Origin: Oculina patagonica
Lineage: Eukaryota
Reading direction: 5' to 3'
NCBI RefSeq assembly: GCF_052425735.1
Contig: NC_135770.1
Span: 10,664,001 to 10,728,000 of the forward strand
DNA: 64,000 nucleotides
The notes under the pieces are model-generated. The model saw nothing but the letters and a program-made list of their open reading frames with translations. It did no database searches and was not told the origin of the DNA. Position 1 is the first letter of the stretch, and each line of letters begins with the position of its first letter. Position numbers and translations under genes: made by a program. Below, piece by piece: positions 37,995-61,088 of the stretch.

Positions 37995-40900
37995 ATGGCG
38001 ACGCATCCGGAACCTAGAGGCAGTTTGAGCGAAACTGACTCCCTCGAAATACTTCAATCAGACCACCAGGATGATCTTTACAGCTATAAAGAATGCAAAC
38101 AGATTGGGAAAAGCTTTTTGAATGACTTGAAACAATCCATAAGAGTCGAATATTTACCAAAAATAGAAGAGCCCAGTGTTAAAGCGACGAAATACCTCGA
38201 GGAAACACAAGTTTTGCAACTGTTAGAAGTAAGCTTTAAGGTTATCTTAACTACATCTCGCCCATATGTCTACTTTTTACTTTTTTTTACTTTTTGAACG
38301 ATTTGTTTTTGATGTCTTGATTAATGAAATATATCAAAATGTAAGTTTTATTAATAGTAAACTTCAGTAATTAGATTTATTTATATTTAATATTTAGCAA
38401 TTCAATTATTGGATGAGGCAGAGTATTATGCAGATCGAGGAGGGTGTTATCCGCCGAAGCCGAATAATTCTTCATATCATACAAAAGCCGAATTCAATAA
38501 TTGTTTTATTATTCATTCAAAATATTTCCAGAGCTCCAAATGCGCAAAATGAATTTAAGGTATCAGTGTACCCCAAAATTGACCATTTTTAAGAAAAATA
38601 TATTTTGGTATTTTCAGGTAGATCTCATTAAGACCTTTCATTCAAAAAAAAGAGCATGGAAAAAGATTGACTCTACACAAAGTTATGAACGAAAAACTTT
38701 TCTTGCCATTAATTATTTGATATTGTTAGCTGTCAACAGGTTGTCTAAAGAAGCGCGGCGATCTACCGTTGCGTGATTTTATATCACAGTTCTTGCAATT
38801 GGTTTTGGACGAGATGCTTTGGGTGTTTTTCGCTGACAAAATGCATAGTTTTTCAGACGTGAAAGAAGAAACATTTTCCCATTCCTTTCTCATGTTCAAA
38901 GAATGGTGCAATAACAGAAAAAGACAAAAGATTTGGCAGATGCACTAGTAGATAGCGACAGCGAATTATTTTTCGCCGCTTGAAGCGGTAACAACGGTAA
39001 CGCCACAACCCGGCATCACGACCAGTTCCTCGGCTTACTTGGGACTCCACGTTTTTGTTGTTTTAGATTTAACATGTCTAAAACTGTTGCACTAAGACGA
39101 AAATTGTTATAAAGCGAGCGGTAGAAATAAAATTATGCAACAGACTGTTTCCGACCAGAAGCAGCATTTGACACCGCTTTGAACAAGTTCTATTGTTAAA
39201 GTAAAATGAACCTTCATTCTATCGCTCAACGCATGATCATTTTCACACGTCTTGTATAATTAATCTCATTAAAGCGGAAGCACGCCTCAAAATACATTTT
39301 CTTTCGTATCTCGTAAACAAAGTTTCGAAGAGAGAGGTGCACATTTTAAGTTCGTTTTCAATGGGGTTTCAACAATTTTCGCTGAAATTTGGTAAGAATG
39401 TTGCCCGATAATTGAGCAACAAAACTATGTCGGCGAATTTTAACTTTTTTCTTCTTTCAAAAGTTATGGCTGTTTAAACGCAGACAATAGTTTTTCCTTA
39501 CACTCTTAAAGTTTATCTGCGTGTCAAAAACAAACCAGACAAGTAATCAATATTCCCCGACACAGTTTCTTAGAGAAATGTGTGAAGAACACATAGCGAT
39601 GCTAATTGCTTTTTCCCACTCAAATTTGTTCGGAAACGAACCCGATTTATGAGCCTCGGTACTTTTGGAAATAACACGCTCTTTTTGGATAACATTAATA
39701 TTTTTACTTAAAATATTCTCCGTAATCTACAATTCCTAAGCTTTCAGAAAATATAATGTACTTTGTTGGGGTTTGCGTTAATTACCAGACGGTAAGGCAG
39801 CTCCAACGCATGATGGTCATTTGGGGTACACTGATACCTTATAGGGTTTTGACAATATACAACAACTTTCGCTTCAAAATTTAATTTAAACTTCAAAACT
39901 TGGTTACCTTCATAAAAATTTCTTGTTCTTTATTATGTCGATATTTAGCAGTTGCTTGAAGTGTCTAGGGAAGCTAAATCTGACTACACAAACTGAAAGT
40001 GACGCTTTCAAAAACAGGTTAACATCGTTCTTGCTTACTTCAATGTAAAACCTCTCCAAGTCCTCCGCTGTGGCTGCTTCAGAAATTTGTTTTTCTAAAA
40101 GATAAGCTTTGAAAATCATTTGACTGGCTTTCATTGCCTTTTTTATGTTGAAACTGTCCTTGTCTTCTAATAATTTGGTAATTTTCTGGTCGTCGTACTG
40201 CACAAATCTCGCTATTTTCCCCTTTTTTAAGTCGTTCTGCACCATAGCAGTTGTCGTGTAACATGGGAACGAGGTTGCGATCGGTTAATGCTGTGGGAAC
40301 GAGGTTGCCATCAGTTAATTTTTGATGTAGGACATTGACGTTATTTTCGTATAATAGAACCTTCTTCCAAATTTAGTCGGTGCTAGCCAGTTAGGCTGCT
40401 GGAATTAACCGAAATTGGCCAGTATGGGCCACTAGGCTCGAAGCAGACTTACCTACCTTACCTGAAAGCCAATTGCAATCAGAAACGGGGAATATTTTGA
40501 ATGAGTAAAAATATAAAATAACTCAGATACTACGCACGCTCTGATTGGTCAAATTGGTCATAAAACCAATGTACTATTGCACTGGTAAATTCTCACTTCC
40601 GTCCCGACATGGCCGCACTACACTCGATTACACATAAGCACGAAGAATTAACTTAGTTTAATGTCTTCTTTTGGTCTATCTGATTGTTAAAATGGAGGAT
40701 ATGACTCTCATTGTGAAAATTTACCAAGGGTGGATCAGGGCCATTCCAAAAAAATTTCACCCCGCCCCCAATTGACGAATTCTTTTAAGAGGTCTAAAAA
40801 TATGTTGGCACCTTTGATTCTTTCTGAGGGGGTAAGTAAAAAATGAGCAAGAAGTGGACTTTTTTGATGGGGGCATCATGTCGGCACTTTGATCTTTTCT

Positions 40901-41622
40901 TTTTAGGGGGTAAATTTTGACTTACTTTGTCAACAGGGGGGATGTGGATATAAAATAGAATGGCCCTCACAAAAATTAATCTTTCCGCCCACCACAGCTG
41001 GAGTGAAGGAACTAGAAAAAAAAGGCAGAACCAAAACTGGTGTTATATATATTTCTAAAAAAGTCCTTGCATAGAGCTTAGAGCACTTAATTGTTAAAAG
41101 CACTCAAATTTGTCAACATTAAATATAAATTACAGCTGTGAAATGAAAAAAAGCTTAAGTGTATAATTAATAGATACACTGTAAGACAAACCTGTAACAC
41201 GTTAAATAACATCATTATCATACACATTTTACCCAGGATGTCAGATCAAAGTTACGCAATACATAGCTACAGCATGGACATTTTAATTTATTTCATTTTC
41301 AATGCAATTGAATGTGACCGGTCAACATGACCGGCAAGACGAAAGGTTGACCAATCAACTCCCCAATCAGTCCGGGCATTGTCTGTTGATCGGCCATTAT
41401 TAAGAGCCCTGCTAGGGGGTGTCTAAGTTTTTGCATCAAATGTTCATCTGAGGAAAACAAATGCCAAAGCTAATGTCTTCTTTATATTTTTTTTTTCAGG
41501 ACTTAATTGCCAAGCTTGTCTTTAAGAGGCCAGAAAAACCAATAGACTTTCTAGTAAAAGAAATGGAAGAATTGAAGAGAAAAGGAACAGAAAAAAACAA
41601 AGAAGACATAACACCTTGCTGA
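37995..41622 (+). CDS. 118-aa protein with an RIIa/Dpy-30-type dimerisation/docking domain (TEX55/EFCAB10-like); exons 37995-38228 and 41500-41622
   Basis: Spliced product reads KATKYLEETQVLQLLE|DLIAKLVFKRPEKPIDFLVKEM, matching the YL...i..l...l....l...P..P..Fl pattern; GTAAGC donor, long T-tract CAG acceptor, AATAAA signals near 41745 and 41798. Confidence 0.82.
38559..39838. mobile_element. Non-autonomous TTAA-targeting DNA transposon (Kolobok-like)
   Basis: Perfect 19-bp TIR GGTATCAGTGTACCCCAAA, flanked by TTAA (left) and TTAT (right); RR...YY termini. Confidence 0.8.
39900..40250 (-). mobile_element. Crypton (DUF3504/ZMYM-related tyrosine recombinase) N-terminal relic
   Basis: RF......I..LLEDKDS.N.KKA.K....IFKAYL.EK...LERFYIEV.K.D.....KASL...RF...RHF....IDIIK..F pattern recalled from animal Crypton proteins. 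Confidence 0.62.
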
Positions 41623-44600
41623 AAAATCAATATATGAGATTTATAAAAATGTCCGCAAAGGACTTTAAACAAACAAGAAAAGTTAGTCAACATGGGTGTG
41701 ACATTATGACATTATTTTTTGATAATTTTTTACAAAGATTTAAAAATAAATGAGTTTGGAAATTTGTAAAACAAAGTTGGGAACGAGTGTCCTATGAGAA
41801 TAAATTAATTTAATATTGGATTAATCAATTTTGTTGCAAATCATGTATTGTTTGTATAAAACTGTTTTAGAGGTTTACAACAATGTAAAGTTAATAATTC
41901 TGTACCTGGTTTGAATACTTTTTTGCTTTGATATTTCCTTTGTGCTGCCATGTTTGTTTTTGCAAAGCTTGATAGGGGATTATGACATCACTGCATGGTC
42001 ATTAGTTGCTGTTTGGTTTAGAGCTGCATTATCATTTCCAGCTAGTGTTAAATCCCCTTCGCAGTTATTGTTTTGTGCCGGAGGGAGGGAGCGTTGCATA
42101 ACGAGCCCAAACATTGGCTGCAAAGGAGACTAGTGTTCATACAGTACAATAACCATTAGAAAACAAATAAAAGGAAAAAGATCCCCAAAAGACAGGAAAT
42201 GTAGTATGGTGTATATCAGGGGGTGGGGGTACTACTCCCTCATATAGGCTATTTAGGTCTGTGCCATGGGATAGCTAGGGTATGGTTTCAGCCCATACAA
42301 GGGTACCCCTTTTGCCCCTTTTGACATTGTGATTCTGGTGTGATCTTCCTTTGATAGGGCTTAAAATTACAGTGCATAAACATCCAGCTAAAGGAAAAAG
42401 ATATTGTTTCTTAAAACTGAATAACCCATTAAACTTTCGATGTCACAGAACAGAAATAAAGGTGGGCTTTTCACAAAATCCGGGTATCAATTGCCCATTT
42501 TCTACCCTTTAATATTTCTCCCCCTCCCCTCCCCTCTTAGCCCCCGAAAAGGAAAAAATGGTTACCCCTTTTTAAAAATGTTTGCATTCAAATTCTGTGC
42601 AGGTACATCGAGCAATAGCTAGCAATGAAATAGGATGAGAGTTAAGAGTTGAAGCTGTGCTAGCAGAATCCTGAGAGACCTGAGATATATTGCATGACGA
42701 GCCCATTATTATTTATACTTATTACACAACGACAAGAACGCCTTGCTAATCTTTTCAATTTAGTATATAAAGAGGTCGCTAGACGAGTGCAAACGTGACC
42801 CTGTTTGCATAACGATCGAGAGTAATCCATATCGACACAGTCCTTCGACAGATGACATGTTCGCAAAACCTCTCAACTGCACATTTTCTTTTCTCTTTGA
42901 CTTCTCTTTTTCGAACAATAGAGGCAAAAATTCATAACCACCCCCTTCCTTCGCCTGCTACGGAAGCTATAAAAATTCACAAAATATGGCGGGAATGCTT
43001 TGGCGGGATTTTAATAATCTCTTCCAAAGGTCGTATTGCGTAACGTACACAACACGTGATCACCGCAGTGTGTTTTGAAACACAATGTGATGATCGACAT
43101 CGCTTACTAGACTGTGATGTCTGAACAAGTTACGAGTTTATCATGGAACTCCAGGGCCGTTAGTCCTTTCCATCATGATCCAAACAATTGCCACGCATCA
43201 AGGAGTCGCCATTAACAAAGATCCAGCCCTCGAGTTTACTCAGCAGTGAATGAACAGTGAGTAAAAAGCTTTGTTTGTTTTGAGTTTACTGCGATGGCGT
43301 TCTCTGTGATACATCACTGGTTACATTTACCGGTCCGGTCAAGACTGATTTCGTACGTGTACAGTATTTGATTTGATTGAGGTTAAGCTGGGTTATGATT
43401 ATTATACCAGTGAACTGATTGATCGACTTGCCGCGGCGTGCAAATGGCATGTGATGAAGAGTTCGTTTAGCGGGATCGACCGGATGATGAATAACAGTTT
43501 AATAGCGCATAAACAATATTAAAACGAACGCAGCATCGATGAATATTAGCAATATACTTCGCCTTTTTTCCGCGGTTTGGAAAGTCTGTTTTCACTGTAA
43601 TAGCCATAAATAGTTTTTATTTTACTGTGTTATGTAATCAATAACTGAACTCAAAACACAGCGAATCTGCCGGAACGAGCAAAGACAAATACTAGGCGAA
43701 ATTCAGATAAAAATATCGTTCGAGTGGCATGATGCGGTATAAACTCGCAACTTCACTGTAACGCCAAATGCACCATATATTATCATCACCCAGATCTTTC
43801 CTCAGAATATGATTTCGTTCTTTAAGTCAAGATCAAAGGTAAATTATTTCTTAATTTAATCATTTACTCCTTATTGTTCCATTTGTTACTTCCTAAAATT
43901 CATGCCGAGCAGCAGTAAGATCACGTTAAAATCATGACAACTCAGTTGTGCACGCGCTTGTTGTAAATTTCGCCACCGCACATAGTTAAAATACGTCAGT
44001 GTGCTTCGATTTCTCTTCCGGTGAAAACTGGGTCCGACGAGAAATACTTGTTTCTTTGCGGTAAAACCTTCACAACATACGGATTGGCGATGCTTTATTG
44101 CATGTACAGGTAAATTCCCCTGAGGGAATATTTACAGTGTAGTACCATTACGATGTCGTAATAATGTTGATTTCATCTGCATATTGTCCATTATATTAGC
44201 AAGAACATTTTATCATTATATGCAGTGCCCCACGTTTATCGATTTTTTGTGCGGACGATTGAAATACTTGCGGTTTGTAAGATTTCCGGGTTTGAATCGG
44301 TTTGGAGGAATATACACCCACGTTTATAGGAATATCATAATTATTTTTATATTCTCTGATTAATCCTTTTCACATACTGTGCTAAAATTGCTGTTTTTAT
44401 CGTCTGAATTTAATATTTTCCAAATGAGACGACGTGGCTCATCCAAATGGGCTAATAAATATTTCATTCCGTACATTTATATTTCTTTTAGTTTGTTTTA
44501 TAAGATAATAAATGGAAGTTGTTATTAGAAATCAACCATTGGCGTTCGTAGCGAATCAACTTGTATGATTATAAGCTGTTCTTAAGGGCAATTATTAGTT

Positions 44601-44821
44601 TAAACATGTTTTTCCAAACAAATCACGGATTTTTTTCTTGTTTGCATAATTTTAATTTTGACAGTTCTGAGTGACGTTATGTAGCAAAACAAATAGATTA
44701 AGTTTATTTCCATGCTTTCCACTAATTAATTCAGTAGTTGCACCTTTAGTTAGGTCAGTTTCAAGTTAGTGAGCTAGATATTTTGATCAATGTGGTCAGG
44801 GTTTCATCTTTCCTCCCCTAT

Positions 44822-45082
44822 GGGGAGCCGCGATGGCGCAGTGGTGAGAGCGCTCGCCTCCCACCAATGTGGTCCGGGTTCGATTCCGGCCCGGTGCCAT
44901 ATGTAGGTTGAGTTTGTTGTTGGTTCTCGTCCTTGCTCCGAGCGTTTTTCTCCGGGTTCTCCGGTTTTCCTCCCTCCACAAAAACCAACACTTCTAAATT
45001 CCAATTCGATCGGGAATCCGAGGGCCACAGGTTTGTCAGTCGAAGACTGTTACGTGCAACCCTCATAAAACAAAGTTGATTT
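44822..45082 (+). mobile_element. tRNA-derived SINE, family A, full length
   Basis: Colinear and near-identical to 5-268; intact A and B boxes. Confidence 0.88.
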
Positions 45083-45489
45083 TTTTCTTTTTTTTTTTAT
45101 ATATATATATATATCTAATCAACGATTTTTTTGTTTGCATAATTTAAATATTGACAGATTTGTGAGATGTTGCGTTGAATTTTATTACAAAAGGATAGGA
45201 AAACAAATAGATGTAAAGTTTATTTTCATGCCTTACGCTAATTTAGTAGTTGCTCTTTTTAGTCATGTTAGTTTTAAGTGAATGATAATTTCATCAGTGT
45301 GGTCAGGTTTTTCATTTTCCGTCTCTATCACATGTTATTATTTTCTCTTCAGATTCTTAAAAACACAAAGCAGGGGTATATCCAGGATCTTATTGTTTTG
45401 TTTTTTGTTTGTTTGTTTTTTTCGGGGGCAGGGGGTGGCAGTGTAAATACAAAACTACTGCCAGTGCTAGTCCCTAACGCATTTGAGAA

Positions 45490-45774
45490 TAGAGCGGTTT
45501 TCACTTGAGTGTCGAAAGTAAATTGCGTTTTCTTTGGTTTTGCATTACTACGCTTAGTGATTGGCTTAAAAATCTCGCGCCACTTTCTCAGCCAATCAGA
45601 ACTAAAGCCAAAACCAATCGTGACTCGCTAGCGCACGTTTTCCCGCGCTTCGTGCCAGCTACATGTATTTGCTTCGAGTTTTGATTGGTTCACTGGATTG
45701 TCTGTGTCCTTTGTGATTGGCCGGAGTAATTACTTTGGTTTTGCTTTTACGACACTCAATTGAAAACTGCTGTA
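45490..45774. mobile_element. MITE with ATTGG/CCAAT internal repeats
   Basis: TIR TAGAGCGGTTTTCA.TTGAGTGTCG / CGACACTCAATTGAAAACTGCTGTA. Confidence 0.78.
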
Positions 45775-45971
45775 TGCTTTCCCTGACCAAAACAAGTACA
45801 ATCTACTCATAGGGATTTCTATCCCTAGAGATAGGGAAGTCTTAAATATCGTCAGGATTTGGAGAACCTGGGTATCTCCAACCCTTCCCTTCTCTGCCCT
45901 CCCACTCACCCACCTTATTGTTGCTGAAACTCAAAACATGATGTTTCTGTTGTTCTTTTCAGTCAGCTGTA

Positions 45972-47375
45972 ATGTACGTGGTGAATTCGTACCTCCATGT
46001 TCTAAAGAACATCGACTCCAGCTGGGGAGACTCGTCCAGCTCAACAGGCTCACGAAGCAGTACAAAGTCATCAAGACGAAGAAGGTCACGTACGTCTTCA
46101 CGTTCATCGCACAACTCATGCAAAGGCAGCCATGCTTACGGGAGCAGCTCAGAGAGCGGGCTATACAGCGAGGAACTTGTCAATTCTGGTTACTATGGAG
46201 ACGATGAGGTTGTCCGCTGTCGATGCCCAAAATGCCTCAGTGAAGCGCAAGCGAGAAAACCCAAGAATGACTTCGCGGCGGAATATGATATAATCAGTGT
46301 GGACTTGAGCGCGTGTTCAACGCCTAAAATAGAAATGCGCTACGTTCCTCCGATAAAACCGACAAATTTTGATGATTATATTATTATACCCTCGTCTAAA
46401 GAGGAATTCTTTGCTGGAAATCTAGCTCATAGCACTCCAATCCAACAGAAAAATACTGATGGCTTTGACGTTTGTATGGAGTCACCGATTGCGGCGTCGC
46501 ACGTCAGCGTCAACGCTCAGAACACGCTCAATGTACACTGCTCGTGTAAGTTATTGGAGGAGGAGGACAGCGGAAGTACGTCACCAAAGCCCGCTGTTTT
46601 GCACCGAGTAGCGAGTAACGGCACCGGAAGTTGTTGGTGGAGAGAAAACATTCTGTGGCAGCTAAAACAGCGAAATGAAGCACAAACCAAACGCTTTTTA
46701 CAACTTCAATCCAACACGCAAAGATGCCGCGCAAGAGTTAGAATCAATAGAGAACTCGCTGATTATTTGAATAAATGCGCTGAATTCCGGCCTCATTCGG
46801 AAGCTACGAGTAATAACGCCTTAATAAATATGGAAGTTGATCCTCTCGATAGATCTGAACTTGTTCTAGCGATAAGGAACCAAAAGACATCCAATGATGA
46901 AATGGAAGACGAAACACGTGTGCGATCGGACAGTATCGCGCATTTAGCAACCGCTTACCTCAAAAGACAGAGAACTTTGACGGAAGAAAAGATCACAGAG
47001 AGCGAAGAATCTTACTCTCCCGGATGCGCAAGACCCAGGATGAGCAGTCGCCCAGGAAAACGCGACAGGGTGCCCGGTAAAAAATGGCGGGAAAGCATTG
47101 TGAATCAGTTGGAGATGAGAAACTTTTTGGAATGCAAGTATTTCACGGACGCTTTAGCGCGCAGAACTATGTCTCAGTTGAGTATTACAGAAACTGTACC
47201 CTTACCCGGACCCGAGCGGGGTATGGACGAATATGACATCATCACAGATGATGAAGTAAGTAGCCTGGACTCCAGAAGTACTCTTATGAACTCGAATCAT
47301 TCCACGTCACAATCGCAGGGTTACTACAGTTCACCTTTCAACGGTCGTTTCTTTAGGCGCGGCAAGCGGAAATAG
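45972..47375 (+). CDS. Uncharacterised 467-aa Ser-rich protein with two ATG16L1-like ATG5-binding helix motifs and three LIR-like motifs (candidate autophagy adaptor)
   Basis: 1404-nt open frame in AT-rich DNA, splice acceptor at 45962 just upstream, internal duplicated motif WRE.I..QL..RN..[QE]...F. Function is inferred from motifs only. Confidence 0.8.
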   Translation: MYVVNSYLHVLKNIDSSWGDSSSSTGSRSSTKSSRRRRSRTSSRSSHNSCKGSHAYGSSSESGLYSEELVNSGYYGDDEVVRCRCPKCLSEAQARKPKNDFAAEYDIISVDLSACSTPKIEMRYVPPIKPTNFDDYIIIPSSKEEFFAGNLAHSTPIQQKNTDGFDVCMESPIAASHVSVNAQNTLNVHCSCKLLEEEDSGSTSPKPAVLHRVASNGTGSCWWRENILWQLKQRNEAQTKRFLQLQSNTQRCRARVRINRELADYLNKCAEFRPHSEATSNNALINMEVDPLDRSELVLAIRNQKTSNDEMEDETRVRSDSIAHLATAYLKRQRTLTEEKITESEESYSPGCARPRMSSRPGKRDRVPGKKWRESIVNQLEMRNFLECKYFTDALARRTMSQLSITETVPLPGPERGMDEYDIITDDEVSSLDSRSTLMNSNHSTSQSQGYYSSPFNGRFFRRGKRK

Positions 47376-50710: not shown

Positions 50711-52604
50711 TTAAAACATGTCTTGACACCGCGTGTCTCTGTTTCTCTCTCTGCGTTTTCTCGACTGTCGCTTCAATCTTCGCCGCCTTTCTTTCAAGAA
50801 CTTCTTGCAGTTTTCTCCTCCCAGCTTGCGCATCCAAGTGCAAAGATGGTAGATGTCTCTCTCGTTGAATCGCAAAACGGCGTTGTAGTTGACACGGTAA
50901 TGGCGCGTCCCCGTAAGGTAGCTGTAATATGAAGGGCGCACGTGCCCACTGCAGGTCGGTCCTGTAACCCTGTTTACAACTCGGTCACGGTTGCCTGAAA
51001 ATACTCCAATTACATAGCGTTCAAATTTCTTGGTGCCTCGTATTTTGTGAAGTTCGTAGACACCAGCACCTGATGAACCCGCTGTGGCGTCACAGCAGTG
51101 GAAAAGCATGTTGGCTGTGAGGGTCTCAACACGACATGTCCTAAAATAAAATAACAACAGCAAGTTAGGCTAAGATAAAGATACCAGTAGCCGCTTAAAC
51201 CAAGGGGGACAAAAGACGGGTCGGGGTTAGGATACTTATCCTCCCAACCCCACAACACTCCCCCCCCCCCCCCCCCTCCTCCAATTTGCTGGACTTTCTG
51301 GGACGTACTCTAAAAAAGATTCTTTAGATTTTGTGAGAAAGACGTGCAAAAACTTTACTTGCTCCAAATCGGTGAATAACAAGATAAAATCATATGTCGA
51401 TGCATGTATCCAGTGACGGGTCTTTTGACAGGCTCGGAAGAATTATGCAGGTGAAAGTGCTTGTTTATAATTTCATAATTAAAGAGTACCTTCCGCTTTT
51501 CACGATGGTTCTGACACGCGACTCCGCCTTTTCCCCTCCCCATCCTCACACATGTAGGGGTGACCTAATGGTTAGCATGTAGCACGCTGGACCTGCAGAT
51601 TGAGCGGTCCGGGTTCGAGCCCACACCGGGGTCACTGTTTTGTGTTCTTGGGCAAGACACGTAACTCTCATCCACCCAGGTGTATAAATGGGTGCGATGG
51701 ACTAGCATCCCATCCAGGGTGAAGTAGAATACTCCTAGTCGCTTCATGCTTCTGAAACCGGGAAAAGCTCCGGCCTCCCTTACCTAAACATAACAGCCGG
51801 TACCAGGGATGATTTCTAAGGAGCCTATAAGCTCTTCATTTATTAAACAAACCTGTATAACATGGTGCCTTCATCTCTGTCCTCGTCAAATGCCGTCAAA
51901 TGGATGGCTTTGTGGGCGCATGCCGTTTTATAGAAGAACGTTTTGCTCGGAGCAATGGGCAGGAAGCAGCGACTGTGGTTTTTGCTTAACTTGATGAGGG
52001 CGTAGTCATACCTCGTGGCAGTAGGATCGCTGCCATTCTTCCACAGCTTTGACATCTTGGTAGAACTGACAGCGTGCCATACTGTGGTACCGTTTTTCAA
52101 CAGGAAGCCCACTCGTAGGCTTTTGTACCCATCTACGTAATGGCTTCCGTTATGAAGGCAATGGGCTGAAGTGAGAACGTGCTTAGGTGAGACCAGGACT
52201 CCAGAGCAGCCAGTAGATAGCATTACCGACGCTGAAAAGGGACATTTTTCGATGAAGTCTCGAGGTACCACGAGACGGTTGTCCGCTTTAAACACAACTC
52301 TCTTGGACCGGTGATTCACAGACTTGGATGCCGAATTTTGCTGCGACTTTGAGATTGTCGATTCGACATTTCCGAAGCTTGGATCGTCTCCGCCATGGCC
52401 TGCCTTGAATTTTAGACTTTGTGTTTTTTCCTTGCCATTTACGGACACCATTCTGCTATAGTCATCTAGAGAGTTGACGATGCTCTTGCCAAACGACTCT
52501 TTGTAGCGCCAAGTTCGGTCCGCTTGAATAGCTTCTTTAGACAGGCCAAAGACTATTGAAGCTTTCACTGCCATCACAATGAGAAATGCAAACGAAATCG
52601 CCAT
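50711..52604 (-). CDS. PRSS23: Secreted PRSS23/PRSS35-like serine protease, 393 aa; exons 51853-52604 and 50711-51140
   Basis: Signal peptide, furin site RSKR, STGCSGVLVSPKHVLTSAHC (His), YDYALIKL (Asp), CDATAGSSGAGVY (Ser), VIGVFSG, YNAVLR; phase-2 junction. Family-level call; orthology untested. Confidence 0.87.
51557..51785 (+). mobile_element. tRNA-derived SINE, family B (CORE/Meta-like body), intronic
   Basis: B box GGTTCGAGCCC; TGTGTTCTTGGGCAAGACAC..TCCACCCAGGTGTATAAATGGGT body; family B tail. Confidence 0.8.
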
Positions 52605-55600
52605 GTTATCACTTAGCAAAAGGGCGAATCTTGTTAAGACCTTCGACTTTATACACTCCGCAGGCAACCTGAAAACAATTAAAGATCAATGCATCAAATT
52701 CTACCAATATCGTAGCAACACCACTTTAACATGAATGATTCGTTAAAACTACATTATTACGGTTTTAGCTTCGTTGAACAGGAAGCTTTCTTCATATGGT
52801 AAACAGGCGCATTGAAAAGACCACAAAGGCATGTACAAATGCCCGCTAATCAGCTTTTGTTTCTGTATTGTTTTTCAAGACCTGTGTTATAAGCTCAGTT
52901 AATCATAAGGCCTCGCATAGTTTGAGTGGTTTTCTTTATAACCTCAAAACAAAACAAATACTTCAGAGTAAGATGCATGACTCATGAGAAATATGAAACT
53001 AGCTCGTCAGTCAGTATATACCGCGAAATTAAGTCGCGTGCCAGTACAAGTCACTAATGCATGATTCATTGATAAGGACCAAAATTTTAAGGCGTATAGT
53101 TTTACAGTATTACAATTATTTTAGCAATAACGCCAGATAAATAGATGTAAGACGATAAGATCAAATCTGAAAAGCTAGCAAGAAATTAGCACATCCCTCC
53201 TATTAAAAGAAATAAGAAATGAATACAAGGAATTAATGGAGAATAAATTTACGGAAGAAAATGAATAAAATGAGAAAAATATCATTGCAAGAAAACTAAC
53301 CAGCAAATGACCAAAACTATTATCCAAAAATCAGAGTTTTACCCTCAAATTGTTACTCTAGTGATTTTTCTGCAAGAAGCCCGTGTAACTCACATGATTT
53401 CAAATCGTGGAGAGATTTTAAGAATTTTTTTGCCGTGTTGTAAGCCGGGTGCCTGCAGCGAGACATCATGTACAGACACAGTCAAAAAACACTTGAACAA
53501 TTCACCCCCACGCTCTGAGCCGTCACTCAAATCTCCAGATTCTGTCGTGTTTTCTTCTTGTTTGCCGAGAAGTAAGAATATTTACGCGAACCCTGTGGCT
53601 CTCACCAGGAAAACAAACAAGCTGAAATCCAAATTTCCGGTGAAAAGCACGGAAAAACACCTCTTGCGCTCTTAAGGGTTGTCTGTGAGTATCCACAACC
53701 GGTGTTACATGGGCGAGAATGTAAACTTTGAAGTCGTTTCGAAATACTATCTCGTTTTTAACTGAATCACAAGCGAATATTGATTTGCCACTGCAAATAG
53801 AGGGGGGGGGTTAGATAAGAATTCGAAACTGTTGCGCTTATTTATATGCGACACATTTCAAACAAATCTAATTGCTGTATACGATTACTCGAATCTAAAC
53901 ACTCTTCTTTACACAAGAGCCATTCGCAATAAACATCAAGACTTTGTTTGTTCAACGCTACTTAAAAATCGTGCAATATTTACAGCAAGACGGATTAAAG
54001 GATTATAGACTGAGAGCATTTGAAAACACTGAGTATACTTCTGCACGGGCATATAGACAGTTTACACACGACATTTTAAGACATAAAGAGTAAAGCAAAT
54101 TCATCGGTTCTTGTACACAAATACGAACAGAAGTAGTACATACCACGTATTATTAGAGAAGCGAGCTCGAGAGTCAAGTTGAACGGTGCACCCCACGAAA
54201 GATGTGCTCTCTGCAAGCTATCACAACTTGAATGTGCAACAAATGACACTTAAAAGGGTTTTAAAACCCACGGATCAAAGAACCACACAAAGTCACGCAA
54301 ACTAACGCTCCGTTATTTAAAGCACAAACGTCACATAATTAGAAAATGCTGTAAAAAGCAGACATACAATTCCACGGGTGAATACAACGTTTTGTTGTCA
54401 GTAAGACTTTCTTTAATCGTAAGATTTATGAGTAAAAAAATTAACTCGCTGAAACGAATCACGTACTTTTCGGGTGGTCGGCGTTTCGCCTTTAACTGGC
54501 TTCCTGTGATTATTTCTGTTTGTTCATGTGGTGTAGCGAAACACGACCAGCTGAAAGTCTTGCGGTTTGCTTGTTAAGCTAAGGTTATCAATGAATTTTT
54601 CGACTGCATCTTGGAAGGTGATACTATAAAAATATCGGACTATATCCACCTCCCGGGCAGATACGGACACATAAGTGAGTCAAGACCGACCTAATTTTCC
54701 GTTCTTTTACAAAGAAATGTTGCCACTAAAATGATACAACTGAAAATGTATTCACAACGAAAACTGTTTTCATAATAAGCGTTTTTGTTTCCCACAAGAT
54801 ACTTTTGCTGACAGCTATGCTGAGCCGATGTCAGTAATGATTGCAGTCATAGAAGCCCTGGATGAATGACTAATTTCTCATTTAGTTGAAACGGCGGTCA
54901 TTCTTGTCGTTTCAGCACCGCCACATGGCCACCTTAAATCTGTTTCAGGCATGCGTATTGACTCAATCGCCTAGTTAACACGGCACACGACCAAAAGCGT
55001 GAAAGCGTGATTTAATACATGGCGCGAAAATGTGATTTTTGTGAGTATCAAACGTGATTGGCCACACAGACTAAGCTACTAGGTAAATGCGTTGCCCTCA
55101 TGAGATCGAGTTGGTTGGCTCGAATTATATCGAGAGGTTCAGGCTGGGATGGCCCTACGAAAACAACGAAATTTATGAAAATTACGTAAAATCGCTAACT
55201 CATTCAGTTGTCTTCAAAAGAAATCGTTGTAAACCATTTCATGTTGGCGTCAAGTTTGTACGTGTGTGCGTTTTATTATTATCTTCTTTTATCTTTTGAT
55301 TGGTTGAGAGACCACTACGTCACTTACAAATCACTGTCTGCAAGACTGCAAATAATACTCTGCTCATGCGCATTACCGTTTAACAAATAGTATTCTGGTC
55401 GTGCGCAGTACAATTCATCTTTGAGAGAATTGCGGATCCTTGGCGGAAACCTTTGCAAGTATTAAAGGCAGCGTGCGCTTTTCATCTCTCTGTTAAAAGT
55501 GTACAATACAGAAAAAGTTTGAAAACAACTGAAGTTTAATGATAATTAAATGGATGAAATATTTTTTAAAGTAGGATACCTGAAATATCGTGATTTCTCA

Positions 55601-59744: not shown

Positions 59745-61088
59745 ATGACCAGGCTTTTCCATTCGGTCGTTTTTGCTCAGTTCCTTACAGCATTGGTTCT
59801 TATGTTTGCACAATTTTATTTGTTATCATTGCAAGACCGGCGGGGACCTATACCTGTTCGAACAAGGCGGGTTCGTGTATTGAACCTTTCATATGGGCGT
59901 GGAACACAAGGAAAGGAGGAACAATTGCATAACGAGGTGACAAAATCCCATGTACAGACTTCACGGCGTTTATACTTGACTTATCAACCTCCGGATGGCG
60001 GGTGGAATAATCACCGTATTGCCCTTGAAAATGCACTTATCATGGCCAAGTTGCTGAACAGAACATTAATCGTGCACCCAGTGGCGTCGCACGACATGGC
60101 GATTTCCTTGAGGCGGAAAAATCTTGCACAGTGGAGAAACTTGGAGAAACGATGGGGAATTAACTGGGTATACAACTGTTTGGCCGAGCGAGATCTGGTA
60201 CCTGTATCGCAGGTTCTCGATCTTAAGCGCATGCGTAATACAGTAGACGTTTACGAAGTAAAAACGACTCACAAACAGTTTTTAGAGGAATTTTCGAATT
60301 TGAAATGGCTTCGTGTTTGTCATTCTGATGCGTTAGGTTTTTGGGTTGATGATATTCCCGCGGGAAACGAGAGTTTACCCCGAGATATTGACTTTGTTCC
60401 CAATAACAGTTCGAGGAGTGTTCGGGCGTGCCCGCGCGAGGTAAAAAGACATACGCACGCGCACAAACCCGTGATTCGAAGAATTTTCAGCGAGCTTCAA
60501 AATGTAAAAGCCGATATTATCTACTTGTCCCAAGACACTGGCTACAAGGCAAATGTCCGGTTTTTCAACCGAGAGCACGCTCTCTTAGCGCAGCAGTGGA
60601 TTCTTAACAACATGAGGTTTTCGCCTCATGTCTACGAAAAGGCGTTTCAGATTTTATCTATACTTCCACGCCCCTTCAACGCCATACACGTTAGAAGAAC
60701 TGACCACAAGATAAGCTCAAGCATGGCGCCATCTCATTGGCTTCAGAACATGGCACGCAAAAATTTCCGAAAAGTTTCCACGGCTCTTTATGTCGCTACA
60801 GATGAACCAGATAAAGGTTGGTTCGAGCCTTTCTACCATGCGGGCTACCAGCTGTATTTCTCAGACGAGTTTTTTCAACCGTCTGGACGTTCGTTTGATA
60901 TGGACATCAAAGGACTGCACGATCAAGTGATTTGTATACACGCCAAGTTGTTCGTGGGTTCAAAGAGCTCGAGTTTCAGTGGTTTTATATACCGCTCAAG
61001 GGGTGAAGTTATGAAGAGAGACGGTTTAATTTTAAGTCATATGCCTGTTGGATGGTTAGAACATAAGCTGAAGCGAGAAACTGACTGA
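59745..61088 (+). CDS. O-fucosyltransferase-family (POFUT-like, GT-B fold) type II membrane protein, 447 aa, single coding exon
   Basis: N-terminal TM helix; GGWNNHRIALENALIMAKLLNRTLIV, FNAIHVRRTD, LYVATDE, DQVICIHAKLFVGSKSSSFS GDP-fucose-binding motifs. Confidence 0.88.
   Translation: MTRLFHSVVFAQFLTALVLMFAQFYLLSLQDRRGPIPVRTRRVRVLNLSYGRGTQGKEEQLHNEVTKSHVQTSRRLYLTYQPPDGGWNNHRIALENALIMAKLLNRTLIVHPVASHDMAISLRRKNLAQWRNLEKRWGINWVYNCLAERDLVPVSQVLDLKRMRNTVDVYEVKTTHKQFLEEFSNLKWLRVCHSDALGFWVDDIPAGNESLPRDIDFVPNNSSRSVRACPREVKRHTHAHKPVIRRIFSELQNVKADIIYLSQDTGYKANVRFFNREHALLAQQWILNNMRFSPHVYEKAFQILSILPRPFNAIHVRRTDHKISSSMAPSHWLQNMARKNFRKVSTALYVATDEPDKGWFEPFYHAGYQLYFSDEFFQPSGRSFDMDIKGLHDQVICIHAKLFVGSKSSSFSGFIYRSRGEVMKRDGLILSHMPVGWLEHKLKRETD

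What the first reader, a model, noticed from the sequence alone, without database searches (positions are those of the whole stretch)
45972..47375. Candidate new autophagy adaptor: orphan protein with two ATG16L1-type ATG5-binding helices plus multiple LIR motifs
Seen: the otherwise low-complexity 467-aa ORF repeats one 20-aa motif, W223-RENILWQLKQRNEAQTKRF (46638-46697) and W372-RESIVNQLEMRNFLECKYF (47085-47144). Established (sequence recalled from memory): the ATG5-binding helix of human ATG16L1 is W13[19 protein letters not shown]32, and the same W-x3-I-x3-L-x2-R ATG5-interacting motif occurs in TECPR1. Both copies here match W, I, Q, L, R, Q/E and F at identical spacing. The protein also has three acidic Y-x-x-I LIR-like motifs, but no WD40 domain, long ATG16 coiled coil or TECPR propellers, so it is not ATG16L1 or TECPR1. 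Inference: a monomeric scaffold that could hold two ATG12-ATG5 conjugates in cis (replacing ATG16 dimerisation) while binding ATG8, i.e. an alternative E3-like targeting factor, or a competitive inhibitor of ATG16L1. In a coral this could bear on symbiosome/LAP-type ATG8 lipidation (speculative).
Basis: partly seen in the sequence, partly recalled or inferred. Interest (0 to 1): 0.9.

Follow-up and report, generated by a model that had tools for sequence, protein, structure and literature searches.

The report
Coral protein with ATG5- and ATG8-binding motifs
A real, expressed, disordered protein found only in stony corals and sea anemones carries two conserved helices that fit the published ATG5-binding motif and three conserved LC3/ATG8-binding-type motifs, so it is a good but untested candidate for a new autophagy scaffold.

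Summary
The 467-aa ORF (45972-47375, +) is a real, spliced, transcribed gene: Oculina patagonica LOC144635761, with one coding exon and a 5'UTR exon at 42931-43256. It has no Pfam domain and no full-length PDB relative. AlphaFold2 predicts it as mostly disordered.

About 50 orthologues exist, all in Scleractinia and Actiniaria. An exhaustive HMM search of 1.84 billion proteins found nothing outside the family.

Both 20-aa helices (W223-F242, W372-F391) match the published ATG5-interacting motif W-x3-I-x3-L-x2-R-x3-Q/E exactly. Both are conservation islands and predicted helices. There are exactly three xLIR-type motifs (Y105, Y136, Y421), all conserved.

A profile of both helix copies against the whole PDB returned three hits. 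One was the ATG16L1 peptide bound to ATG5, aligned in register (E = 0.44). A profile of the third LIR returned one hit, the FYCO1 LIR bound to LC3 (E = 0.077).

The weaknesses are:
- Neither E-value is significant.
- Separate profiles of each helix copy lose ATG16L1.
- Helix 2 is conserved on all faces.
- No binding could be computed.

I put about 0.4 on a dual ATG12-ATG5 and ATG8 binder. It would be a new variant of a known kind (domain-less, tandem AFIM). Interest is moderate to high, and a pull-down would test it directly.

The scan's own note s1-294158 had already flagged the third LIR in this window.

The parts
42931..43256 (+). 5' untranslated exon of the dominant transcript
   Evidence: RNA contigs in three runs join 43256 to 45963 with GT..AG ends. 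Reading through the joint gives an in-frame stop just upstream of the ATG.
43257..45962 (+). Intron (2706 nt). It holds repeats, including a MITE-like element at 45486-45778.
   Evidence: Joint 43256->45963. Donor GTGAGT and acceptor TTTTCAG. 32-nt inverted terminal repeats.
45972..47375 (+). Complete coding sequence, 467 aa, in a single coding exon. The exon starts at 45963, and the RNA contig runs about 620 nt past 47399 as 3'UTR.
   Evidence: It is 100% identical to Oculina patagonica LOC144635761 isoform X1, apart from 13 alternative N-terminal residues.
45972..46025 (+). Conserved N-terminal helix MY(V/L)xNSYxxVLKxIDSSW; partner unknown
   Evidence: Conservation island. Predicted helix.
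46152..46211 (+). Invariant acidic/serine island: E-S-G-x-x-S followed by NSGYYGDDEV. The first part resembles a beta-TrCP phosphodegron (my inference, not tested).
   Evidence: Invariant columns E, S, G, S, N, S, G, Y, G, D, D, E. No PDB match.
46275..46304 (+). LIR-type motif 1 (AAEYDIISVD; Y105, I108)
   Evidence: xLIR regex match. Y invariant in 45 homologues. Lies in a disordered region.
46368..46409 (+). LIR-type motif 2 (FDDYIIIPSSKEEF; Y136, I139). Resembles the ULK1 LIR DDFVMVP; Y is replaced by F in anemones.
   Evidence: xLIR match. Conservation. ULK1 peptide sequence as printed in bioRxiv 2026.01.05.697675. The PDB profile search gave only chance hits.
46638..46697 (+). AFIM-type helix 1 (W223, I227, L231, R234, Q238 ... 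F242)
   Evidence: Strict AFIM match. W, R, N and F invariant; I/V, L and Q/E conservative. Predicted helix.
46734..46775 (+). Conserved island RVRINRELADYLNK; short predicted helix, function unknown
   Evidence: The PDB profile search returned noise only.
46917..46961 (+). Conserved R-x-R-S-x-S site followed by a short helix (SIAHLATAYL). A basophilic-kinase site is my inference.
47085..47186 (+). AFIM-type helix 2 (W372, I376, L380, R383, E387 ... F391) with its conserved C-terminal extension FTDALARRTMSQLSI. This is the best-predicted element of the protein.
   Evidence: Strict AFIM match. Almost every position invariant. Predicted as a 37-residue helix with pLDDT up to 83.
47223..47261 (+). 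LIR-type motif 3 with acidic C-terminal extension (MDEYDIITDDEVS; Y421, I424, E428 at position X7)
   Evidence: xLIR match. The only PDB hit of its profile is the FYCO1 LIR peptide 5cx3_E, E = 0.077. FYCO1 LIR sequence and the role of X7 from bioRxiv 2026.01.05.697675.
47307..47336 (+). Conserved C-terminal island S-x-S-Q-G-Y-(Y/H)-S-S-P; function unknown

Best explanation
The gene encodes an intrinsically disordered protein built from short linear motifs and found only in Hexacorallia. I propose that it links the two ubiquitin-like arms of the autophagy machinery.

Proposed mechanism:
- Each of the two amphipathic helices (W223-F242 and W372-F391) docks into the ATG5 groove that normally holds the N-terminal helix of ATG16L1 or the AIR of TECPR1. 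One molecule could therefore hold up to two ATG12-ATG5 conjugates.
- The three acidic Y/F-x-x-I motifs bind ATG8 (LC3/GABARAP) in the LIR docking site.
- The favoured net effect is to concentrate ATG12-ATG5, the E3-like activity, on membranes or cargo that already carry ATG8. This would be feed-forward or cargo-directed lipidation without ATG16L1.
- AFIM binding excludes ATG16L1 and TECPR1, so the same anatomy could instead sequester ATG12-ATG5 and act as a brake.

Shown here: the gene is real and expressed; the motifs are present, conserved, helical or disordered as required, and resemble ATG16L1 and FYCO1 peptides.

Inferred: every binding step and the direction of the effect.
For: 1. Both helices satisfy all five positions of the published AFIM. 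They also share with ATG16L1 the Q before L, L at R+3 (copy 2) and F at W+19 (alignment). The residues reported critical in ATG16L1 are I17, L21, R24, D25 and Q28. Here they are I/V, L, R, N and Q/E (PMC10638514).
2. A 20-mer of ATG16L1 (K14-E33, carrying an E33S change), almost the same W-to-F span, is sufficient to bind ATG5 at sub-micromolar affinity. The repeated unit here therefore has the size of an autonomous binding unit.
3. 41 of 45 orthologues, from Scleractinia to Actiniaria, keep two relaxed AFIMs. W, R, N and F are invariant or nearly so.
4. AlphaFold2 predicts isolated helices at exactly these two places in an otherwise disordered chain: mean pLDDT 48, helix 2 up to 83.
5. A profile of the 30 helix copies against 177,635 PDB sequences gave three hits. 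One is ATG16L1 residues 11-32 from the ATG12-ATG5-ATG16N crystal, aligned in AFIM register.
6. The protein has exactly three xLIR matches, all conserved. The profile of the third has one PDB hit, the FYCO1 LIR bound to LC3, including the X7 acidic residue that contacts LC3B R70.
7. Control profiles of four other conserved islands returned nothing or unrelated proteins.
8. TECPR1, the known alternative E3 scaffold, also combines an AFIM with a LIR.
9. The gene is transcribed and correctly spliced.
Against: - The ATG16L1 similarity is not statistically significant (E = 0.44, 13 bits). IFT74 scores the same.
- Profiles of each helix copy alone do not recover ATG16L1 at E<=10. TECPR1 AIR and yeast Atg16 chains were never hit.
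- Conservation is not confined to the AFIM face. Helix 2 is nearly invariant on all sides, and helix 1 also conserves N, W and Q on the opposite face. This suggests additional or different contacts.
- The D25 equivalent is an invariant N.
- One coral clade has L in place of the AFIM W in copy 2.
- Y is invariant in LIR1 and LIR3 across the family, which would also fit a phosphotyrosine motif.
- There is no recognisable membrane-targeting module: no hydrophobic segment, maximum Kyte-Doolittle 0.72.
- Basic/serine tracts could mean a nuclear protein.
- ATG5 is universal, yet this family is confined to Hexacorallia.
- No complex prediction or binding measurement was possible.
Confidence: 0.4

Rival explanations
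1. The protein is an ATG8-binding adaptor or autophagy substrate only. The three LIR-type motifs are functional, but the two helices bind another partner, or each other, or a membrane. Their fit to the AFIM is coincidental.
For: The LIR evidence is stronger than the AFIM evidence: a single PDB hit to FYCO1 at E = 0.077 and three xLIRs. Helix 2 is conserved on all faces, and the copy-specific profiles lose ATG16L1.
Against: This requires a chance five-of-five AFIM match in a helix of the right length, present twice and kept in 41 of 45 orthologues. No alternative helix-binding family was recovered from Pfam or PDB.
Confidence: 0.2
2. The protein is unrelated to autophagy. It is a lineage-specific, phospho-regulated docking protein. 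Its invariant Y-D-I-I motifs act as phosphotyrosine (SH2-type, pYEEI-like) or other ligands, and its helices bind a calmodulin-like or cnidarian-specific partner.
For: Y is invariant in motifs 1 and 3. The protein carries many putative phosphosites (E-S-G-x-x-S, R-x-R-S-x-S, HSTP) and RS-like basic tracts. The language-model neighbours are generic disordered signalling proteins such as INKA1 and KRAP, with scores below 0.85. All motif-to-PDB E-values are above 0.05.
Against: Motif 2 swaps Y for F in anemones, so it cannot depend on phosphotyrosine. Motif 3 matches FYCO1 beyond the core (DIITD-D/E-E). An IQ reading fits only 3-4 of 6 consensus positions and leaves the invariant W and the I unexplained. 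No IQ or other Pfam family was hit by any of the 30 helix copies at E<=10. It would be an odd coincidence that the only structured-complex peptides recovered are ligands of ATG5 and of LC3.
Confidence: 0.3
3. It is not a real gene: a chance ORF, a pseudogene, or an exon of a larger known protein.
For: The Desmophyllum gene model P0018 fuses an upstream gene onto this ORF.
Against: Spliced RNA contigs in three runs have an in-frame stop in the 5' exon. About 50 full-length orthologues start at the same Met. The Nematostella orthologue is also a single coding exon. An Oculina RNA contig runs straight through the place where the Desmophyllum model would splice (pieces at 41500-41809).
Confidence: 0.01

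Closest known systems
ATG16L1 / ATG16L2 / yeast Atg16 N-terminal ATG5-interacting helix (AFIM; PDB 4GDK, 4NAW, 4TQ0)
   Same: A 20-residue amphipathic helix with W-x3-I-x3-L-x2-R-x3-Q/E, plus Q before L and F at +19. The same span as the ATG16L1 peptides that bind ATG5 on their own.
   Different: No ATG16 coiled coil or WD40 propeller, and no Pfam ATG16 match. Two copies lie in one chain instead of one copy per subunit of a dimer. The D25 equivalent is N. The overall similarity is not significant.
TECPR1 (AIR helix plus LIR; ATG16L1-independent E3 scaffold for ATG12-ATG5; PDB 4TQ1)
   Same: It combines an AFIM-type helix with a LIR in a protein that is not ATG16. It binds ATG5 as a monomer, in competition with ATG16L1.
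   Different: TECPR1 has DysF, TECPR-propeller and PH domains that read the membrane. The coral protein has no folded domain at all. The PDB profile search did not retrieve the TECPR1 AIR.
FYCO1 C-terminally extended LIR (PDB 5CX3, 5D94)
   Same: Y/F-D-I-I-T-D-D/E-E-V/L: identical core, threonine and acidic X5-X7. It is the only PDB hit of the motif-3 profile.
   Different: FYCO1 is a 1478-aa coiled-coil, FYVE and GOLD protein. There is no similarity outside the motif.
Cargo receptors that recruit the E3 directly (for example yeast Atg19 binding Atg5 through AIM-like motifs; from my own knowledge, not checked here)
   Same: The concept: a mostly disordered receptor that binds both ATG8 and ATG12-ATG5 to direct lipidation locally.
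   Different: Those receptors do not use an ATG16-type helix, and no cargo-binding domain is visible here.

Membership tests
AFIM-bearing ATG5 ligands (ATG16L1/TECPR1-type motif) | Sequence W-x3-I-x3-L-x2-R-x3-Q/E | tested here: met
   Both copies match strictly. 41 of 45 orthologues keep two relaxed matches.
AFIM-bearing ATG5 ligands (ATG16L1/TECPR1-type motif) | The motif lies in an alpha-helix available for binding | tested here: met
   AlphaFold2 predicts helices at P0001 residues 235-260 and 382-418 in an otherwise disordered chain. This is a prediction only.
AFIM-bearing ATG5 ligands (ATG16L1/TECPR1-type motif) | All residues reported critical in ATG16L1 (I17, L21, R24, D25, Q28) are present | tested here: inconclusive
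   I/V, L, R and Q/E are present. The D25 position is an invariant N.
AFIM-bearing ATG5 ligands (ATG16L1/TECPR1-type motif) | Detectable sequence-profile similarity to known AFIM helices | tested here: inconclusive
   The combined profile finds ATG16L1 4gdk_C in register at E = 0.44. Single-copy profiles find nothing. TECPR1 and yeast Atg16 were not found.
AFIM-bearing ATG5 ligands (ATG16L1/TECPR1-type motif) | Physical binding to the ATG5 groove, abolished by L-to-W and R-to-D changes | not testable with these tools
   No complex prediction or assay is available. The mutant design follows bioRxiv 2026.06.01.729256.
ATG16 family proper | ATG16 coiled-coil domain (Pfam ATG16), with or without a WD40 propeller | tested here: not met
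   No Pfam hit at E<=10 for the protein or for any helix copy. No long coiled coil or propeller in the model.
TECPR1 | TECPR repeats, DysF and PH domains | tested here: not met
   No Pfam hit. The model is disordered.
LIR-containing ATG8 interactors | Core [W/F/Y]-x-x-[L/I/V] with acidic flank (xLIR), in a disordered region, conserved | tested here: met
   Three xLIR matches. All lie in low-pLDDT regions. Y and I are invariant or nearly so. Motif 3 matches the FYCO1 LIR.
LIR-containing ATG8 interactors | LDS-dependent binding to LC3/GABARAP | not testable with these tools
   Needs a pull-down or a complex model.
IQ calmodulin-binding motif | [FILV]-Q-x3-[RK]-G-x3-[RK]-x2-[FILVWY] | tested here: not met
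   Copy 1 fits 4 of 6 positions and copy 2 fits 3 of 6, by inspection. No IQ Pfam hit in 30 copies at E<=10. No IQ-bearing chain appeared in the PDB search.

The most novel reading that the evidence does not exclude
This is a third class of scaffold for the ATG12-ATG5 E3, after ATG16L1/L2 and TECPR1. It would be entirely domain-less, bivalent in cis through tandem AFIM helices, and self-targeting through three LIRs. It arose in the hexacorallian ancestor and drives ATG16L1-independent ATG8 lipidation on a particular membrane, such as phagosomes or symbiosomes.
Probability: 0.15. Interest if true: 0.85.

Novelty: new variant of a known kind. Interest (0 to 1): 0.62.

Why it matters
The papers read here name only ATG16L1, ATG16L2 and TECPR1 as proteins that use the AFIM helix to hold ATG12-ATG5. 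Which of them is engaged decides where ATG8 is lipidated: canonical autophagy, or conjugation of ATG8 to single membranes (CASM/VAIL and the sphingomyelin-TECPR1 route). Recent work indicates that the number of ATG5-binding arms matters: one arm supports partial LC3 lipidation, and two are needed for robust GABARAP lipidation (bioRxiv 2026.06.01.729256).

A natural protein that places two such arms and three LIRs on one disordered chain would be a minimal scaffold built by evolution. It would test what is really required for E3 targeting. In corals and anemones it could bear on how phagocytosed algae are kept or cleared. It also gives a name and a testable function to a conserved, completely unannotated cnidarian gene family, which includes Nematostella LOC5511866, in a tractable model organism.

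Tried and rejected
- Full-length Pfam and PDB sequence searches found nothing.
- ESM Atlas look-alikes, for the whole protein and for residues 376-446, were only generic disordered families below the meaningful score.
- The exhaustive profile search found no relatives outside the family. There is therefore no bilaterian or octocoral homologue to borrow a function from.
- IQ or calmodulin motif: rejected.
- AKAP-type RII-binding helix, prompted by the RIIa-like neighbour gene: rejected. The helices are too polar, and the neighbour is a separate transcript.
- LC8 'TQT' site (NKTQT in anemones, AQT in Oculina): it sits inside helix 1, is absent from helix 2, and LC8 ligands are strands. Left as a remark only.
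- FFAT-like reading of EEFFAGN: the conserved positions (E-E-F-x-x-G) do not fit the FFAT core.
- PDB profile searches with LIR1, LIR2, the acidic island and the central region gave none or chance hits. They are useful as controls.
- Synteny between the Nematostella locus and this window: none detectable by tblastx.
- Literature search for the LOC identifiers: no paper.
- Earlier scan notes on autophagy genes in this genome: none.
- Fetching coral ATG16L1, ATG5 or TECPR1 for direct comparison was not possible with the tools. Kim et al. 2015 and Otomo et al. 2013 are not in the held library.
Full report
**1. The observation**

The two 20-residue repeats are at 46638-46697 (WRENILWQLKQRNEAQTKRF, W223-F242) and 47085-47144 (WRESIVNQLEMRNFLECKYF, W372-F391).

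PDB chain 4gdk_C (ATG16L1 in the ATG12-ATG5-ATG16N crystal) reads [22 protein letters not shown]. The published ATG5-interacting motif (AFIM) is W-x3-I-x3-L-x2-R-x3-Q/E (PMC4453027).

Both copies meet all five positions. They are the only strict matches in about 128,000 codon positions of the six-frame translation of the window. Only 19 of 200,000 shuffles of this protein contain a single strict match.

The three acidic Y-x-x-I motifs (AEYDII, DDYIII, DEYDII) are present. They are exactly the three matches of the xLIR regular expression in the protein, which has only five core [WFY]xx[LIV] sites in all.

**2. It is a real gene**

The protein is 100% identical to Oculina patagonica 'uncharacterized protein LOC144635761 isoform X1'. 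That isoform has 13 extra N-terminal residues from a small alternative exon at about 43812.

RNA contigs from three runs join 43256 to 45963 across a GT..AG intron of 2706 nt. They then cover the ORF continuously and run about 620 nt into the 3'UTR.

The 5' exon (42931-43256) has an in-frame stop just before the acceptor. The ATG at 45972 is therefore the start in the dominant transcript, and the whole protein is encoded by one exon. The Nematostella orthologue is also a single coding exon.

**3. What kind of protein**

There is no Pfam family at E<=10 and no PDB sequence relative. The protein is hydrophilic (GRAVY -0.82) and has no hydrophobic segment.

AlphaFold2 with a 45-sequence alignment gives mean pLDDT 48 and pTM 0.16, so there is no globular fold. 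A few isolated helices are predicted. The two longest and most confident coincide with the two repeats: P0001 residues 235-260 and 382-418, with pLDDT up to 83.

**4. Distribution**

The word-indexed search found 53 homologues. The named ones are from Scleractinia (Oculina, Desmophyllum, Pocillopora, Montipora, Acropora) and Actiniaria (Actinia, Nematostella). Many others come from transcript-sized contigs.

An exhaustive HMM search of 1.84 billion cluster representatives with the family profile returned only eight proteins, all family members or fragments of them. As far as sequence methods can see, the family is confined to Hexacorallia. It has never been annotated or mentioned in the searchable literature.

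**5. Conservation**

Identity between coral and anemone proteins is only 36-45%, but it is concentrated in about a dozen islands. These include the following:
- Both helices.
- All three LIR-type motifs.
- An N-terminal helix.
- An invariant E-S-G-x-x-S / NSGYYGDDE block.
- RINRELADYLN.
- An R-x-R-S-x-S site.
- A C-terminal SQGY(Y/H)SSP.

Across 30 helix copies, W, Q (before L), R, N and F are invariant, and R (after W) and L nearly so. In the 45-sequence alignment, 41 proteins keep two relaxed AFIMs. The exceptions are one clade with L in place of W in copy 2, and one sequence with T in place of I.

It is not met: the residues are conserved.

**6. Unbiased comparison with solved complexes**

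I built profiles of each conserved island and searched all 177,635 distinct PDB sequences at E<=10.

| Profile | Hits |
|---|---|
| Both helix copies combined | Three: IFT74 (a 12-residue QLQQRN match), ATG16L1 residues 11-32 from 4GDK/4GDL/4NAW aligned over 22 positions in AFIM register (E = 0.44, 13.4 bits), and an unrelated synthetase |
| Third LIR | One: the FYCO1 LIR peptide crystallised with LC3 (5cx3_E, E = 0.077), aligned DIITD-D/E-E |
| LIR1 | None |
| LIR2 | Unrelated proteins only |
| Acidic island | None |
| Central region | Unrelated proteins only |

The last four searches act as controls. The FYCO1 alignment includes the X7 acidic residue that contacts LC3B R70.

The limits must be stated plainly. 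Neither E-value is significant. When each helix copy is profiled separately, ATG16L1 is no longer found. The resemblance lies in what the two copies share, W..I..QL..R(N/D)...(Q/E)...F. That is motif-level, not domain-level, similarity. TECPR1's AIR and yeast Atg16 were never retrieved.

**7. How the motif compares with what is known about ATG5 binding**

- Peptide studies found I17, L21, R24, D25 and Q28 of ATG16L1 to be the critical residues. They also showed that 20-mers spanning K14/W13 to F32/E33 bind ATG5 on their own, at 0.4 µM, or 32 nM when stapled (PMC10638514).
- The coral repeats span the same W-to-F unit. They carry I/V, L, R and Q/E at those positions, with an invariant N where ATG16L1 has D25.
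- L21W/R24D abolishes ATG5 binding of ATG16L1. Experiments with one-armed and two-armed ATG16L dimers indicate that bivalency matters for robust GABARAP lipidation (bioRxiv 2026.06.01.729256).
- TECPR1, the known ATG16L1-independent E3 scaffold, also combines an AFIM with a LIR.

**8. Points against a simple AFIM reading**

- In helix 1 the low-entropy positions point on average to 41 degrees on the helical wheel, the same as the AFIM face (40 degrees). However, N, W and Q on the far side are also conserved.
- In helix 2 nearly every residue is invariant on all faces. That argues for extra contacts (a second partner, a membrane, or a deeper groove) or for a different binding mode altogether.
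- Y is invariant in LIR1 and LIR3, which a phosphotyrosine ligand would also explain. LIR2 does swap Y for F in anemones.
- No membrane-targeting or cargo-binding module is visible.
- Basic/serine-rich tracts might indicate nuclear localisation.

**9. Explanation and rivals**

| Explanation | Confidence |
|---|---|
| Dual binder: two AFIM-type helices for ATG12-ATG5 and up to three LIRs for ATG8, on a disordered chain | about 0.4 |
| The LIRs are real but the helices bind something else | about 0.2 |
| Not autophagy-related: a phospho-regulated docking protein with another helix partner | about 0.3 |
| Not a real gene | about 0.01, excluded |

For the dual binder, the more likely effect is to concentrate E3 activity on ATG8-positive membranes or cargo. 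Sequestration of ATG12-ATG5 away from ATG16L1 and TECPR1 is the alternative.

An IQ/calmodulin reading was tested and rejected.

**10. Novelty and verdict**

The protein is not a member of the ATG16 or TECPR1 families, because their defining domains are absent. It may work like their ATG5-binding modules.

Tandem AFIMs plus LIRs on a domain-less protein appear in none of the papers I could search. I class it as a new variant of a known kind, conditional on binding.

The decisive one, ATG5 binding, remains open and is cheap to do by complex prediction and a pull-down with L-to-W and R-to-D mutants.

Noticed in passing
window 45486-45778 (also 44800-45100): The intron holds a roughly 293-bp element with 32-nt terminal inverted repeats (84% complementary). 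It has sharp read boundaries at 45489/45490 and 45771/45775, and summed contig depth of 10^5 in RNA libraries. It looks like a very abundant MITE. There was no Rfam match. A second repeat around 44800-45100 has depth of about 10^4.
   Followed up: partly
window 37995-38234 and 41494-41622 (+): A small upstream gene has exons that match the N-terminal 100 residues of the Desmophyllum model P0018 (…YLEETxxLQLLE | DLIAKLVFKRPEKPIDFLxKEMEE). It gives weak sub-threshold Pfam hits to Tex55 and DUF5586, so it may have an RIIa/DPY30-like docking fold. In Desmophyllum it is fused to the finding's ORF. In Oculina an RNA contig reads straight through the would-be donor (41500-41809), so the fusion is probably an annotation artefact or a rare isoform.
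   Followed up: partly
window 43809-43841 (+): A tiny alternative first coding exon (MISFFKSRSK, donor GT) is used by RefSeq isoform X1. The three RNA runs examined support the 42931-43256 non-coding first exon instead, with only trace depth at 43800-44200.
   Followed up: partly
window 46152-46169 (ORF residues 61-66): E-S-G-L-Y-S has E, S, G and S invariant in all homologues. This is the spacing of a beta-TrCP phosphodegron (D/E-pS-G-x-x-pS), which would imply regulated turnover. This is my inference from general knowledge and was not tested.
   Followed up: no
window 46917-46934 (ORF residues 316-321): A conserved R-x-R-S-x-S site (RVRSDS; RLRSNS in anemones) fits a basophilic kinase (Akt/AGC-type) or 14-3-3-like site. 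It lies just before a short conserved helix.
   Followed up: no
window 46674-46685; L001 orthologue: In sea anemones the end of helix 1 reads N-K-T-Q-T, which resembles an LC8/DYNLL 'TQT' anchor. In Oculina it is E-A-Q-T. It is probably incidental, because it lies inside a predicted helix and is absent from helix 2.
   Followed up: no
window 51843-52667 (-) and 59745-61088 (+): Two neighbouring long ORFs: one with a trypsin-like serine-protease signature (…LTSAHC…), and a 447-aa ORF resembling a GDP-fucose protein O-fucosyltransferase-type protein. I judged both by eye only. They are unrelated to the finding.
   Followed up: no
L001 13515-17908 (-) and the contig of P0052: In Nematostella, and in the unidentified divergent lineage carrying P0052, the gene's downstream neighbour encodes a PA14/CHGN glycosyltransferase, which suggests old microsynteny. 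tblastx found no counterpart in the Oculina window.
   Followed up: partly
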